From the IMG/VR virus record IMGVR_UViG_3300049460_000312, positions 1 to 64,000 of that record: a stretch of 64,000 nucleotides of DNA, one strand, 5' to 3'. The notes below the pieces were generated by a model. The model searched no databases, was not told where the DNA came from, and saw only the letters and a list, made by a program, of their open reading frames with translations. Position 1 is the first letter of the stretch, and each line of letters opens with the position of its first letter. The position numbers were made by a program, and so were the translations under genes. Below are positions 6,943 through 64,000 of the stretch, piece by piece.

Positions 6943-6977
6943 AGCATAAAGGCCAGGGTTGCCCCCGGCCTTTATTT
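6943..6977. terminator. Intrinsic terminator hairpin with TTTATGC tail
   Basis: ATAAAGGCCAGGG-TTGC-CCCCGGCCTTTAT. Confidence 0.75.
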
Positions 6978-30921: not shown

Positions 30922-31146
30922 TTAGAAGGCCCAGGTCTTTTCCTCCGGAGCGCACAGGGTCGTGCCAAACACTACGTCGATCAGGGTGCAGAGCAAGCCG
31001 AACACCAGCAAGCCGCCAATGAAGATCACCACCGCCTGGAAAATCCAGCCGAGCAGTGTGCCGATACCCGCCGCGATGCTGGGGATAGCGATCAACACCA
31101 GTGCGCAAATGGCGATGACGAAGATGAAGCTTACGAAGCTGCTCAC
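30922..31146 (-). CDS. Small two-TM membrane protein
   Basis: 74 aa; GTG start with AAGGAG RBS. Confidence 0.8.
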   Translation of the reverse strand: MSSFVSFIFVIAICALVLIAIPSIAAGIGTLLGWIFQAVVIFIGGLLVFGLLCTLIDVVFGTTLCAPEEKTWAF

Positions 31147-31175
31147 GTTGAAACTCCTTCCGTTGTGTTACCAAA

Positions 31176-31488
31176 GCCCGTAATGCTTAGGACCCTGCAG
31201 GATATCCTAAGCAATACGGGCGACCCGTATTGTCATCGCTCGATAGGCTTGTCCTATAACGAGAGGTTTGCACATGTTACGTCCGCCGTCGTGTGCTACG
31301 GCCATAGCGTTTTGGTCAGTCTGGTGACTGTGTGATAGTTCTCTCAAACGCCGGAGCGTCAGTGGATCTTAAGTCCCGGGTGTCGTCTAGTGACACCTAA
31401 CTAGGGGATATTCGTAAAGCAGGTTCTCCTTTGCTTCTAGCGTTCGTTGCAAGGGAAGTGACTTATCGCCCCACTTCGTAGGCGTGCC
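31176..31488 (-). ncRNA. Candidate structured RNA / regulatory leader
   Basis: About 310 nt non-coding gap with at least 8 hairpins and two mutually exclusive stems. Confidence 0.55.
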
Positions 31489-61449: not shown

Positions 61450-62292
61450 TTACACATCCAGAACGTTGGTCGACGGATAGGCTCGACCCGCACCCCAGAT
61501 CAAACGCAAACCACCATTCAGACCCGGTGTATTGGTGGCCGCCCGTGAGGAAGAGGAACCGCCGCCGAATTCACCCGAACCGGTTATCTGCGAACCCGGA
61601 TTACCATTGGTAGAGCGTGTTGGGGTCGCGACCGCGGTCGTACCCAGCCCCAGCAGGCCAGTGCCACCGCCACGACCCGCATTGACGTTATCGTTATACC
61701 CGCTGCCGCCCGTGCCGCCTGAGCCGGCGCCCGTGCCCGCGGCAGGTGCTGTAGCAGTGCCGATGTCCGTACCATTACCACCCTTGCCGTTATAGCCACC
61801 GGCCGCACCGCCGCCCGCTGCTGCATAGTCAAAGGCGACACCGTCGCCACCATTACCCCCACCATCGCCCTGATAGGTGCCGCCTTTGCCGCGTGACGAA
61901 TCGTTGGCAGTGTCCCCACCCGCATCGCCACCATTGCCTGCAAACAAGCGGGTAGCCCCGCGCGCCAGGTAGGTGTCGCCGCCTTTTGTACCGATCGCGG
62001 CACCCGTGGCCGTGACACCGACTTGACCCACCACGACGGTTAGATGTTCGCCCGGGGTCACGGGGATTTGGTTCTTCCAGCCTAGGCCACCACCACCCCC
62101 TGAGGACCCCCAATGGCCTGTATCCTTGAAAGTGTTAATCCAGCCACCCCCGCCTGCACCGATACCCACCCCGCAGAGGAAGTAGACACCGCCCGGCACC
62201 ACGAAGTCATACGTACCCGGCGTGGTAAAGGCCATCTGACCCGGCCCAGCCGCGACAGTCTTAGGCTTAATTGTTAAGAGCATTTCCAACAT
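61450..62292 (-). CDS. Glycine-rich virion/tail-fibre-like protein
   Basis: FTTPGTY.FVVP.GV, GAGGGG, IPVTPGE.LT..VG; start MLEMLL. Confidence 0.8.
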   Translation of the reverse strand: MLEMLLTIKPKTVAAGPGQMAFTTPGTYDFVVPGGVYFLCGVGIGAGGGGWINTFKDTGHWGSSGGGGGLGWKNQIPVTPGEHLTVVVGQVGVTATGAAIGTKGGDTYLARGATRLFAGNGGDAGGDTANDSSRGKGGTYQGDGGGNGGDGVAFDYAAAGGGAAGGYNGKGGNGTDIGTATAPAAGTGAGSGGTGGSGYNDNVNAGRGGGTGLLGLGTTAVATPTRSTNGNPGSQITGSGEFGGGSSSSRAATNTPGLNGGLRLIWGAGRAYPSTNVLDV

Positions 62293-62303
62293 AGCTATCC
62301 TTT

Positions 62304-63155
62304 TTACACATCCGGCACGTAATTGGGATAAGTGCGGCCCGTACCCCAAACAATCCGGCAAGCACCGGTCTGGGCAGGATCATTGGCGAAACCCGGTCCG
62401 CCTTCGCTGGCACCACCACCGTATTCACCTGAGCCGGGATACTGAGAACCAGCCCCGCCCTTAGTATTAGCGGCCGTACCTGCCCCAGCGCCATTTGAGC
62501 CAGCACCCAGAATACCTACACCACCGCCGCGGCCACCGGCCCCAGAACCACCCCGTAGCACGCCAAAGCCGCCACCGCCACCGCCACCGGTGCCGTTGGC
62601 ACCCGGTGTGCCTGCGACGTTAGCGCCACCGGCCCCACCATTGCCTGAATAACCACCCGCACCACAACCGCCGCCGGCATATTCCCAGTAATAGACAGCC
62701 GGTGTACCTGAGTCACCGCCGCCATCGCCGATACCGCCCGCATTGGTATTCAGAATCGTGGCACTTTCTGTTTGACCGCCCCCCGTGCCGCCATTAGCTT
62801 GCAGCAGCACGGTACTGCCGCGCAGAATTTTCGTAACACCGCCATTACTAGCACGACCTGATTTCACGCTGGTGCCGCGATCACCTACGATAATGGTGAG
62901 CGTTTCTCCGGGCGTCACTGGAATTGAGGTTTTCCAACGCAGTGAACCGCCGTAGCCTGCCGAACCCCACCCACCGGTGGAGCCTGGGCTACGATCCCAG
63001 CTGCCGCCACCGCCACCCACCCCGACTGCTGAAATAGAAAACACACCTGCTGGCACTACCCAGGAGTACGTACCGGGTGTCGTAAAAGCCACCTGATTAT
63101 TACCAACCGTCTGGCTAGTGCCTGTACCCTTTATCTGCAATAAGGCTTCTAACAT
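62304..63155 (-). CDS. Glycine-rich virion/tail-fibre-like protein (tandem paralogue)
   Basis: Same motifs; start MLEALL; ends RIVWG.GR.YP. Confidence 0.8.
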   Translation of the reverse strand: MLEALLQIKGTGTSQTVGNNQVAFTTPGTYSWVVPAGVFSISAVGVGGGGGSWDRSPGSTGGWGSAGYGGSLRWKTSIPVTPGETLTIIVGDRGTSVKSGRASNGGVTKILRGSTVLLQANGGTGGGQTESATILNTNAGGIGDGGGDSGTPAVYYWEYAGGGCGAGGYSGNGGAGGANVAGTPGANGTGGGGGGGFGVLRGGSGAGGRGGGVGILGAGSNGAGAGTAANTKGGAGSQYPGSGEYGGGASEGGPGFANDPAQTGACRIVWGTGRTYPNYVPDV

Positions 63156-63196
63156 TGCCGTACCCCGTTTGACTAATTCTTCGACATAGGATTTTG

Positions 63197-63284
63197 CGGC
63201 ATAAAGGAAAGAGAGGTGATCCCCTCCTTCCTTGTCTCCAAAAATTGACGGCATAAAAAGATCGAGCGGTTGCCCGCTCGATCT
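63197..63284 (-). terminator. Two tandem terminators, each with a TTTATGCCG tail
   Basis: Hairpins at 63197-63233 and 63249-63284. Confidence 0.8.
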
Positions 63285-63700
63285 AGTAATTGCATGATGG
63301 TGAAGCTGCACCCTGCCGCCGTAATCTCCTCGTACGTCGGGACCCTACTCGCCTATCCTGCAATCGGGGCACTCGGGAGAATGTCCTTAGGGTAGTGATC
63401 TTTTTCGCGTGGTAGCTTATCCGCCCAGGGGACGGGGTAATGCAAGGGGGTTAGGTGGCTTCGTCCTATCGCAGGATACTGCGCACCTGAACCGTACAGA
63501 TTGTCAAAGAAAGCGCTGCGTCATCCCGACGTGGGCGCTACTTGGTGGATTCTTCAGGACGTGATTGGGCTCCGGAATGATTACTTCTAAATGGCATGCC
63601 CTGCCTGCGTGTCAGTCTCGGTGTCATTGCTTTTGCTGTGTTCCCCGATGGGATTTAATCAGCCTGTGTCGACGTTTGAGACCTTACTGCGTTTCCACAT
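63285..63700. ncRNA. Candidate structured non-coding RNA
   Basis: About 400 nt with no credible ORF and several nested long-range inverted repeats. Confidence 0.5.
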
Positions 63701-63719
63701 AACATACAGCGATAGGCTG

Positions 63720-64000
63720 TTATTTTTTACCCTGCTCTTTCTTCATGTCCTGCAGCAGGTCATGGAGTTCCTGGGCCTGCTCCGGTGCACGCTTCTCCAT
63801 GATCTCTAGCATCAGGTCGCACATGTACGGGGGCTGGTTGATAAACTCGGTAAAGGACATGTGAAAGGCGGTGCCAATCTTCAGATCGGCAAACGCTTCC
63901 AGACGCTCGCGCAAGCGAGAGGCCACGATCGCATCTTCACACCAGTGATGTCTCACCAGCGCAAAGTGGTCGTCGGTTGCGGCCCGATGGTCGTAGATAC
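63720..64000 (-). CDS. Hypothetical jumbo-phage protein, partial (starts beyond the right edge)
   Basis: Frame is open to the edge: IYDHRAATDDHFALVRHHW...SFTEFINQP. Confidence 0.75.
   Translation of the reverse strand, partial: IYDHRAATDDHFALVRHHWCEDAIVASRLRERLEAFADLKIGTAFHMSFTEFINQPPYMCDLMLEIMEKRAPEQAQELHDLLQDMKKEQGKK

What the first reader, a model, noticed from the sequence alone, without database searches (positions are those of the whole stretch)
63285..63700. Second candidate large ncRNA with nested long-range pairings and a possible pseudoknot
Seen: about 400 nt lacking a credible ORF, bounded on the minus-strand 3' side by two tandem terminators. Inverted repeats: GTAATC 63321-26 / GATTAC 63579-84; ACGTCGGGA 63334-42 / TCCCGACGT 63524-32; ACCCTA 63342-47 / TAGGGT 63388-93; AGGTG 63453-57 / CACCT 63484-88. 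TATCCTGC 63354-61 / GCAGGATA 63471-78 crosses those stems. Inference: a folded phage RNA. A double terminator suggests an abundant transcript.
Basis: partly seen in the sequence, partly recalled or inferred. Interest (0 to 1): 0.6.

Follow-up and report, generated by a model that had tools for sequence, protein, structure and literature searches.

The report
Conserved structured RNA gene of jumbo phages
The 560-base gap between two genes of this soil jumbo phage holds a non-coding RNA gene of about 440 bases. Its folded shape is kept by compensating mutations in 17 related phages, it matches no described RNA family, and its job is unknown.

Summary
The window is the first 64 kb of a 283-kb phiKZ-related jumbo phage from a rhizosphere metagenome, akin to Ralstonia phages RP12/RP31 and FLC4-3B/FLC1-1B.

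The evidence comes from comparison. The same non-coding element lies downstream of the same small gene in 16 further phages and contigs. A covariance model of its 100-nt core finds all 17, five of them never used for training. All 20 core base pairs show compensatory changes: 90% of cells pair, against 58% when shuffled and 34-43% when slid.

The element has:
- a conserved upstream box and TATG start motif;
- a closing helix made by the invariant 5' GUGGAAAC;
- a GNRA-type hairpin;
- a conserved unpaired 15-mer;
- a hairpin with an AGUA/GAA internal loop;
- a variable 3' part;
- a terminator.

It has no conserved ORF, no Rfam match and no tRNA or tmRNA.

The 9-bp pair, the 6-bp pair and the 'pseudoknot' are not conserved. 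Verdict: a real, new structured phage RNA family of unknown function.

The parts
63717..63731 (-). Upstream A-rich box GGTAAAAAATAACAG, at about -33 to -19 from the predicted start. It overlaps the stop codon of the upstream 110-aa gene. Candidate promoter element.
   Evidence: Coordinates. It is kept next to the RNA in the relatives. In L062 it lies after the gene's stop, and in L063 it is duplicated next to the RNA behind an inserted ORF. It resembles the phiKZ middle-promoter box AAanTTACc at -24 (PMC4666361). Similar GTAAAA(A)TTAC boxes occur at about 8 other places in the genome.
63706..63720 (-). Small hairpin ACAGC-CTATC-GCTGT between the box and the TATG.
   Evidence: A hairpin of different sequence sits at the same place in most relatives (GGGT-AGC-ACCC in RP12, GCATT-AGATAT-AATGC in L056, GGG-TACTT-CCC in L062).
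63698..63706 (-). TATGTTATG, two overlapping TATG motifs. The predicted transcription start is the G at 63698.
   Evidence: The second TATG is kept in 16 of 17 homologues. phiKZ non-virion RNA polymerase starts at the G of TATG (PMC4666361; PMC12809450). The start itself is inferred, not shown.
63544..63698 (-). Domain I. P1 is GUGGA 63698-63694 with UCCAC 63549-63545. P2 is GGUCUC 63683-63678 with GAGACU 63619-63614. P4 is GCUG 63663-63660 with CAGC 63638-63635. P5 is UCCC 63653-63650 with GGGA 63645-63642. Variable hairpins follow.
   Evidence: RNAalifold on 6 sequences gives 28 pairs, 10 with compensatory changes. The near-twin L055 has GGUCCC/GGGACU in P2. The strain SNP 63614 A>G turns G-U into G-C. 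P1 complements are found in nearly all members (GUGAAAU/AUUUUCAC, GUAGA/UCUAC, AGGAAC/GUUCCU). P4 (ACUG/CAGU) is recovered in the distant group.
63513..63538 (-). Helix H1 (GCGC 63538-63535 with GCGC 63516-63513) enclosing hairpin H2 CGUC-GGGAU-GACG (63531-63519). The loop is a GNRA tetraloop in most relatives.
   Evidence: All 8 pairs have compensatory changes. H2 is 100% paired. Loops are GGGA, GUGA or GAGA in 13 of 17, GGGAU in the window, L055 and FLC4-3B, and no such hairpin was found in L064.
63497..63512 (-). Conserved unpaired block UUUCUUUGACAAUCUG (family consensus YUCUUUNACAAUYYG).
   Evidence: It is the best-conserved sequence of the family apart from the 5' end. It is unpaired in the consensus structure.
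63450..63489 (-).
   Evidence: Each of the 17 sequences folds to the same architecture on its own. All 12 pairs have compensatory changes.
63285..63449 (-). Lineage-variable 3' extension. It holds a hairpin at 63435-63421 and the helix ACCCUA 63393-63388 / UAGGGU 63347-63342.
   Evidence: It is present in the window, L055, FLC4-3B, FLC1-1B, RP12, L059, L062, L063 and L065, and short or absent in the others. The helix is kept in FLC and RP12.
63249..63284 (-). Intrinsic terminator: an 11-bp GC-rich hairpin, a U run and TTTATGCCG. This is the predicted 3' end of the RNA, about 444 nt from 63698.
   Evidence: I6. Every homologue ends with such a hairpin plus TTTATGYYG. The SNP 63282 T>C keeps the pair as G-U.
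63197..63233 (-). Second hairpin plus TTTATGCCG module, probably belonging to the downstream Gly-rich gene (ATG at 63155) as a backstop terminator and TATG start.
   Evidence: I5. L055 keeps TTTATGCCGCAAAATCC here without the hairpin.

Best explanation
SHOWN. The gap holds a conserved, non-coding, structured element read on the window's minus strand. It is single-copy. It lies downstream of the same small gene (phrog_12109) in 17 RP12-like jumbo phages and contigs. Its helices are kept by compensatory mutations while most of its sequence drifts.

INFERRED, anatomy and expression. It is a stand-alone RNA gene. Transcription starts at the G of the second TATG (63698), driven by the phage's own RNA polymerase with the help of the A-rich box at about -25. 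It ends at the hairpin and U run at 63284-63255, which gives about 444 nt here and 290-470 nt in relatives.

INFERRED, fold. Domain I is closed by the 5'-terminal GUGGAAAC helix. The core is a GNRA-type hairpin, an exposed 15-nt strand and a hairpin with an AGUA/GAA (loop-E-like) internal loop. An optional 3' domain follows.

INFERRED, weakest step. It acts in trans as a folded RNA that binds one or more proteins, as a scaffold or decoy, during middle or late infection. It does not act as an mRNA, a leader or an antisense RNA.
For: Homologues. blastn finds the stretch in FLC4-3B, FLC1-1B, RP12 and RP31. A diverged copy lies in contig L021. All 12 of 12 contigs fetched through the neighbouring protein carry it.

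Core model. R2 finds all 17, five of them outside its training set (E 2e-8 to 0.05), and one copy per genome.

Covariation. 20 of 20 core pairs have compensatory changes. 90.4% of cells pair, against 58% when shuffled and 34-43% when slid, and 0 of 500 shuffles reach the observed score.

Independent folds. Each sequence folded alone gives the same 3' hairpin.

Strand. G-U pairs number 29 against 11 A-C at paired cells.

Domain I helices covary.

Not coding. Stops interrupt the frames and single-base indels are frequent.

Independence from neighbours. An extra ORF separates it from the upstream gene in L021, L057 and L063, yet the box and TATG stay with the RNA. Downstream genes differ, or the convergent DNA polymerase follows directly. 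Every copy ends in a terminator.

Selection. Between the window and L055 the RNA is 86-99% identical while the adjacent protein gene is 69-82%.

Promoter logic comes from phiKZ.
Against: - No expression data. No RNA run holds the stretch, so the start, the end, abundance and timing are all inferred.
- No terminator lies between the upstream gene and the element in the window, so read-through from the operon is likely. The RNA could be a processed or unprocessed 3' UTR.
- The single sequence shows no thermodynamic signal.
- The pair counts were made on alignments fitted to the model, which leans towards the structure.
- Domain I is too variable for one model to span the family.
- No protein partner, target or activity is known. 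'Binds protein' rests only on motif types (GNRA loop, AGUA/GAA loop, exposed strand).
Confidence: 0.62

Rival explanations
1. It is a cis-acting structured 3' untranslated region of the upstream operon (phiKZ gp078-gp077-like genes and the 110-aa gene). In this reading it stabilises the message, blocks 3' exonucleases, or insulates the convergent DNA polymerase gene from read-through. It would have no function of its own in trans.
For: It has the same strand as the upstream genes, and the window has no terminator between the stop codon (63720) and the element. It always lies 3' of the same operon. It often sits at a convergent junction with the DNA polymerase gene.
Against: A plain terminator does this job at about 55 other places in the genome, so 300-450 nt of covarying multi-helix structure is far more than needed. 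The box and TATG travel with the element when an ORF is inserted upstream. The invariant 5' block begins exactly at a TATG and forms the closing helix.
Confidence: 0.16
2. It is a base-pairing regulatory RNA. The exposed, conserved 15-mer (YUCUUUNACAAUYYG) is a seed that pairs with phage or host mRNAs, and the rest is a stabilising scaffold.
For: The block is unpaired in the consensus and is the best-conserved internal sequence. Small RNAs are known in phiKZ-like phages (PMC11512511; PMC13282480).
Against: Complementary sites in the phage genome are at chance level: 47 against 37 expected 9-mers, 12 against 8.7 10-mers and 2 against 2.0 11-mers, none at an evident start site. The RNA is much larger and more elaborately folded than typical seed-type sRNAs. 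The host transcriptome could not be tested because the host of this metagenomic phage is unknown.
Confidence: 0.1
3. It is a DNA-level or replication element: an origin with a structured primer transcript (as ColE1 RNA II or the T4 origin transcripts), or a recombination or packaging signal next to the DNA polymerase gene.
For: It lies next to the DNA polymerase gene and at the border of an accessory-gene hot spot. It sits in a local mosaic. 52 of about 70 differences between FLC4-3B and FLC1-1B over 5.3 kb fall in it. The block shared at high identity by the window and L055 starts inside it. A conserved promoter precedes it.
Against: G-U exceeds A-C nearly threefold at paired positions, which points to a single RNA strand rather than duplex or cruciform DNA. 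The transcript ends at a terminator rather than running into an unwinding region. Genes converge here instead of diverging. GC skew shows no switch.
Confidence: 0.07
4. There is no function. It is a decayed gene or neutral spacer whose similarity among relatives reflects recent common descent, and the inverted repeats are chance.
For: The inverted repeats and folding energy of the single sequence are within chance.
Against: Compensatory changes occur at every core pair across 17 sequences whose flanking protein is only 59-99% identical. The model detects members it was not trained on. Conserved islands reach about 80% identity in sequence that is otherwise 30-50% identical. No frame is preserved.
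Confidence: 0.03

Closest known systems
Large orphan structured RNAs associated with phages and prophages (ROOL, GOLLD; from my own knowledge)
   Same: It is several hundred nucleotides long, with multiple covarying helices, GNRA-type loops, phage-encoded, no coding capacity, and a function not deducible from context.
   Different: No Rfam 15 model reaches its gathering score on the element in the window or in the 15 related loci scanned. A permissive scan (E up to 10) of the window region and of 12 loci gave no recurring family on it. It is shorter than ROOL and GOLLD, which I recall as roughly 580 and 800 nt. It is not next to tRNA genes. It is confined to one clade of nucleus-forming jumbo phages.
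Small RNAs of phiKZ-like phages found by cap-selective long-read sequencing (201phi2-1 sRNA005, the phiKZ sRNA upstream of gp182)
   Same: They are non-coding RNAs conserved by position and fold among related giant phages, of unknown function (PMC11512511).
   Different: Those are under 250 nt, derive from the 5' UTR, and lie upstream of a tail gene. This one is 290-470 nt, intergenic, downstream of the gp077-like operon, and has its own start motif and terminator. The core model finds nothing in PhiPA3.
phi29 packaging RNA (pRNA; from my own knowledge)
   Same: It is a phage-encoded, stably folded, protein-binding RNA with its own promoter, and so a precedent for a phage RNA acting as a structural part of a machine.
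   Different: No sequence or model similarity (no Rfam match). The size and helix layout differ. Nothing links this RNA to packaging.
Bulged-G (loop E / sarcin-ricin) internal loop motif
   Same: The internal loop reads 5'-AGUA-3' opposite 5'-GAA-3' between two helices in nine members (window, L055, FLC4-3B, FLC1-1B, RP12, L059, L061, L063, L065). This is the sequence signature of that motif, as I recall it.
   Different: It is only a sequence signature. The other members read AGGA/GAU or similar, and the window has an extra C (CGAA). No three-dimensional evidence.
phiKZ promoter classes (late TATG with +1 at G; middle box AAanTTACc at -24)
   Same: TATG is conserved immediately before the invariant RNA 5' block. 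An AAAAATAAC box lies at about -25.
   Different: The box is not identical to the phiKZ consensus. Recognition by this phage's polymerases is untested.

Membership tests
Any described RNA family (Rfam 15, 4227 models, including RNase P, 6S, SRP, tmRNA, group I/II introns, ROOL, GOLLD, pRNA, riboswitches) | A covariance-model score at or above the family's gathering score | tested here: not met
   No match in the window at gathering. On 63100-63800 at E up to 10 there were only three chance-level hits of 14-18 bits. There was no match on the element in 15 related loci at gathering, nor in 12 loci at E up to 10.
tRNA / tmRNA | Cloverleaf or tRNA-like domain with a tag reading frame, as detected by ARAGORN | tested here: not met
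   0 genes in the whole window.
Structured non-coding RNA (general) | Base pairs kept by compensatory changes across homologues, above controls | tested here: met
   20 of 20 core pairs have changes on both sides. 90.4% of cells pair, against 58.0% shuffled (0 of 500) and 34-43% slid. The same holds on the 12-sequence alignment. Independent single-sequence folds agree.
Structured non-coding RNA (general) | Folding energy of the sequence itself lower than shuffled controls | tested here: not met
   z = +0.89 for 63285-63698 on the minus strand; 81 of 100 shuffles fold at least as well.
Stand-alone RNA gene | Its own transcription start | not testable with these tools
   Only motifs are available: a conserved TATG (16 of 17) and an upstream box that stay with the element when ORFs are inserted. 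No RNA run is available.
Stand-alone RNA gene | Its own intrinsic terminator | tested here: met
   An 11-bp GC-rich hairpin plus a T run at 63284-63255. An equivalent hairpin ends every homologue.
Protein-coding gene or small ORF | A reading frame kept open in homologues | tested here: not met
   In the conserved core, five of the six frames have stops in 13-16 of 17 sequences and the sixth in 7. The longest ORFs differ in place and strand. Single-base indels are frequent.
GNRA tetraloop hairpin | A four-base loop G-N-R-A closed by a Watson-Crick helix | tested here: inconclusive
   GGGA, GUGA or GAGA in 13 of 17 members, with a covarying 4-bp stem. The window, L055 and FLC4-3B have a five-base loop GGGAU. 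No such hairpin was found in L064.
Bulged-G / loop E motif | AGUA opposite GAA between two helices, with the characteristic non-canonical pairs | tested here: inconclusive
   The sequence signature is present in nine members, and an AGGA/GAU variant in most of the others. The geometry cannot be tested.
Seed-type base-pairing sRNA | A conserved exposed seed with complementary target sites above chance | tested here: inconclusive
   An exposed conserved 15-mer exists. Complementary sites in the phage genome are at chance. The host was not testable.
phiKZ-type late promoter | TATG with initiation at its G | tested here: inconclusive
   The motif is present and conserved, and its properties in phiKZ come from PMC4666361. 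Initiation was not measured. TATG is short and common.

The most novel reading that the evidence does not exclude
The RNA is the core of a so far undescribed ribonucleoprotein, or a self-assembling RNA particle, specific to RP12-like nucleus-forming jumbo phages. It could be a decoy or sponge against a host RNA-targeting or RNA-sensing defence, or a factor in RNA handling around the phage nucleus. Local sequence turnover with preserved helices fits an arms race. FLC4-3B and FLC1-1B are 99% identical overall, yet about 50 of their differences fall in about 300 nt of this RNA.
Probability: 0.15. Interest if true: 0.85.

Novelty: new member of a known kind. Interest (0 to 1): 0.62.

Why it matters
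Large structured non-coding RNAs that are neither ribosomal, RNase P, tmRNA nor introns are rare, and several of the known ones come from phages and still lack a function. This adds a well-supported new family: 17 members, every core pair covarying, and absent from Rfam 15.

It occurs in nucleus-forming jumbo phages, where RNA biology (own polymerases, export from the phage nucleus, escape from RNA-targeting defences) is an active question. Two cultured phage pairs carry it (RP12/RP31 and FLC4-3B/FLC1-1B on Ralstonia), so its expression and function can be tested directly. FLC4-3B is being considered for biocontrol of bacterial wilt.

The work also gives a draft of the phage's transcription punctuation: hairpin plus TTTATGCYG modules, and candidate early and middle boxes.

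Tried and rejected
- Rfam at gathering and at permissive thresholds, on the window and on relatives: nothing on the element.
- ARAGORN: nothing.
- The exact 17-mer TATGTTATGTGGAAACG in IMG/VR gave only RP12 and two chance matches, L005 and L007, which do not align beyond the 17-mer. A relaxed two-block pattern in IMG/VR gave only RP12. A two-block pattern in metagenome contigs gave nothing.
- Relatives with the gp077-like protein below 50% identity (L010-L020, L022-L049) show no sequence or model match. Some carry an ORF of about 150 aa at that place.
- Whole-genome model searches found nothing in FLC9, PhiPA3, LucasX and RsoM3USA.
- RSL2 and RSF1 gave 18- and 14-bit hits. They cover only a GNRA hairpin and UUCUUUAACAA, in a different context, without the 5' block or the 3' hairpin. 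I rejected them as members, but they remain unresolved.
- RNAalifold on the MAFFT alignment of all 17 core sequences recovered only the GNRA hairpin, because the variable stems were misaligned. This was solved by model-based realignment.
- The domain I model R3 does not reach distant members, with or without filters.
- Strain contigs from four metagenomes gave only four SNPs in the element, too few for covariation but consistent with the helices. No RNA runs were found.
- A tertiary pairing between CAGUAAAACC and UUUUAC of the unpaired block was rejected, because changes in L060, L062 and L063 are not compensated (reading).
- A sigma-70 reading of TTGACA in the unpaired block was rejected. The spacing is wrong and varies, and RP12 grows in rifampicin (PMC5468394).
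- GC skew is uninformative.
- The large protein-representative search, structure prediction and complex prediction were not used. No protein claim depends on them.
No alternative genetic code was used. Read laying was given 1001 letters.

Full report
**Setting**

The window is bases 1-64000 of a single 283,373-bp virus record with terminal repeats, recovered from a rhizosphere metagenome. Its nearest cultured relatives are the phiKZ-related Ralstonia jumbo phages FLC4-3B and FLC1-1B and RP12/RP31 (PMC11530567, PMC5468394).

The finding lies between two minus-strand genes:
- Upstream is a 110-aa protein (phrog_12109) that ends at 63720. It follows homologues of phiKZ gp077 and gp078.
- Downstream is a glycine-rich protein (phrog_4474). 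Its real start, by comparison with its paralogue at 61450-62250, is the ATG at 63155, not the GTG at 63311 that the ORF finder lists.
- The non-coding gap is therefore 63156-63719.

**The observation**

All five inverted repeats are at the stated coordinates. Two terminator-like hairpins lie on the minus strand at 63284-63259 and 63233-63204.

The repeats do not exceed chance:
- Perfect inverted 8-mers number 3 against 1.06 in dinucleotide shuffles (fraction 0.14).
- 9-mers number 1 against 0.21 (fraction 0.14).
- Without the terminators the RNA folds no better than shuffles (z +0.89).

**Homologues**

blastn finds parts of the gap in FLC4-3B, FLC1-1B, RP12 and RP31, in the same place, inside intergenic stretches of 470-540 nt. 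A metagenome contig, L021, has a shorter and diverged copy after an inserted 97-aa ORF.

The word search with the neighbouring 110-aa protein gave 33 clusters at 51-99% identity. I fetched twelve with their DNA, and all twelve carry the element just downstream. That makes 17 sequences, 290-470 nt from the TATG to the first terminator.

The following are shared by most or all members (exceptions are noted with the individual parts):
- An upstream box (G)TAAAAAATAACAG.
- A small hairpin of variable sequence.
- TATGNTATGTGGAAAC.
- A two-tier hairpin ending in an A-rich tail (CAGCAAAAGC or CAGUAAAACC).
- A short hairpin with a GGGA, GUGA or GAGA loop.
- The block YUCUUUNACAAUYYG.
- A hairpin with an AGUA...GAA internal loop.
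- A variable 3' part.
- A GC-rich hairpin followed by TTTATGYYG.

**Structure**

A covariance model of the 100-nt core was seeded on four close sequences and rebuilt on the 12 sequences it found.
- It detects all 17. Five were never used in training: L056 2e-8, L062 2e-5, L065 3e-5, L064 5e-4 and L063 0.05.
- It finds one copy per genome.
- On the resulting alignment all 20 pairs show changes on both sides. 90.4% of cells pair, against 58% in column shuffles (0 of 500) and 34-43% when partners are slid.
- These alignments are fitted to the model. Independently, each sequence folded on its own gives the same stem A, internal loop and stem B hairpin.
- G-U pairs outnumber A-C 29 to 11, so the folded strand is the window's minus strand.

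In domain I, RNAalifold on six sequences gives P1, P2, P4 and P5 with compensatory changes.
- The window's near-twin L055 has a double change in P2 (GGUCUC/GAGACU to GGUCCC/GGGACU).
- A strain SNP at 63614 turns a G-U pair into G-C.
- P1 pairs the invariant 5' GUGGAAAC with a complement 130-200 nt downstream. It covaries across the family: GUGAAAU/AUUUUCAC, GUAGA/UCUAC, AGGAAC/GUUCCU.
- Domain I is too variable for one model to span the family.

- AGGTG/CACCT is stem A, so it is supported.
- ACCCTA/TAGGGT is a helix of the 3' extension shared with FLC and RP12.
- ACGTCGGGA is the 5' arm and loop of the local GNRA-type hairpin. Its far partner occurs only in the window and L055.
- GTAATC/GATTAC is disrupted in L055.
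- The 8-bp 'pseudoknot' partner lies in an insertion specific to the window lineage. In L055 it changed without compensation.

These window-specific complements to core elements could be alternative pairings, but nothing supports that.

**Not coding, not a leader**

In the conserved core, five of the six frames have stops in 13-16 of 17 sequences and the sixth in 7. The longest ORFs differ in place and strand, and single-base indels are common.

The genes downstream differ among relatives: Gly-rich proteins, a GNAT acetyltransferase, a nucleotide kinase, an SNase, or directly the convergent DNA polymerase. Every copy ends in a terminator. The element is therefore not a 5' leader.

**Transcription signals (inferred)**

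In phiKZ the non-virion polymerase starts at the G of TATG, and middle promoters carry AAanTTACc near -24 (PMC4666361; PMC12809450). RP12 grows in rifampicin, so the phage polymerases do the work.
- Here the second TATG is kept in 16 of 17 sequences. It places +1 at 63698, the first base of the P1 helix.
- The box AAAAAATAACAG spans -30 to -19.
- The box and the TATG stay with the RNA when an ORF is inserted (L021, L057). In L063 the box is duplicated.

Hairpin plus TTTATGCYG occurs about 60 times in the genome. In L055 the second module before the Gly-rich gene has lost the hairpin but keeps TTTATGCCG. The 'double terminator' is therefore better read as a terminator followed by the next gene's terminator-and-start module.

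**What it is not**

- No Rfam 15 family matches at any threshold tried, in the window or in relatives.
- There is no tRNA or tmRNA.
- The exposed 15-mer has no complementary sites above chance in the phage genome.
- GC skew shows no origin-like switch.
- The core model finds nothing in more distant chimalliviruses. In RSL2 and RSF1 it gives only partial hits of 14-18 bits.
- The published small RNAs of phiKZ-like phages are shorter and lie elsewhere.

**Evolution**

Along window-FLC-RP12 alignments the gap shows islands of about 80% identity in a background of 30-50%.
- Between the window and L055 the RNA is 86-99% identical, while the adjacent protein gene is 69-82%.
- Between FLC4-3B and FLC1-1B (genomes 99% identical) about 52 of some 70 differences in 5.3 kb fall within the RNA's 5' 300 nt, and helices such as P4, P5 and H1 are kept by compensating changes.
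- The locus is thus a mosaic junction where the fold, not the sequence, is preserved.

**Verdict**

This is a real, conserved, structured non-coding RNA gene of RP12-like jumbo phages, and a new family relative to Rfam 15.
- The anatomy and the covariation are shown.
- The start site, the independent transcription and the timing are inferred from motifs.
- The proposed mode of action is the weakest step. I propose a folded RNA acting in trans through protein binding, as a scaffold or decoy. That rests on motif types only.

Noticed in passing
whole genome (G000); in the window at 6950, 12367, 15438, 17234, 26513, 28987, 32604, 42277, 54655, 63205, 63257: A GC-rich hairpin immediately followed by TTTATGCYG recurs about 60 times. 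The stem base is often extended as CGGCATAAA...TTTATGCCG. It looks like a combined terminator and TATG start module that punctuates the transcription units.
   Followed up: partly
G000 near 6950, 17234, 194381, 203171, 277854 (minus strand): The motif CAACATATTAC follows several terminator modules. It may be the early-promoter box of this phage group.
   Followed up: no
G000 98098, 103490, 108490, 110814, 201899, 241935, 259137: Boxes GTAAAA(A)TTAC(A/C) like the one before the RNA. They resemble the phiKZ middle-promoter motif AAanTTACc.
   Followed up: no
window 61450-62250 and 62304-63155 (minus strand): Two tandem paralogous glycine-rich genes (phrog_4474, with a weak hit to a minor tail protein family). 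The ORF finder's starts (62361 and 63311) over-extend both.
   Followed up: partly
between the RNA and the convergent DNA polymerase gene, in L055-L066, L001, L002: An accessory-gene hot spot. Different relatives carry a GNAT acetyltransferase, a nucleotide monophosphate kinase, an SNase, Gly-rich proteins, an F5/8-type-C protein, or nothing at all.
   Followed up: partly
L001 2501-2900 against L003: FLC4-3B and FLC1-1B are almost identical over 5.3 kb except for about 52 differences packed into the RNA's 5' 300 nt. This is a recombination patch or fast turnover with the helices preserved.
   Followed up: partly
L057 3518-3810 and 3870-4173 (minus strand); L058 4701-4806: Group I introns (Rfam RF00028: 83, 49 and 24 bits) lie next to an HNH ORF in the DNA polymerase region of metagenomic relatives.
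   Followed up: no
L002 about 2262 (RP12): RP12 has an extra hairpin plus TTTTATGC in the middle of its element, about 313 nt after the TATG. Its RNA may end there, and the conserved 3' extension may be a second short unit.
   Followed up: no
L081 2476-3050 (RSL2 193975-194549, minus strand): A 575-nt intergenic gap in RSL2 (and at the same place in RSF1) gives a weak partial hit to the core model, covering only a GNRA hairpin and GUUCUUUAACAA. It is either a distant relative or chance.
   Followed up: partly
window 31023-31483; G000 68671-69156, 111936-112392, 121148-121681, 122552-122996, 133785-134203, 214210-214645, 227094-227585, 230076-230482: Further gaps of more than 400 nt between the longest ORFs. 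None resembles this RNA by blastn or by the core model. Some of these may not be true intergenic gaps but artefacts of my greedy ORF selection.
   Followed up: no
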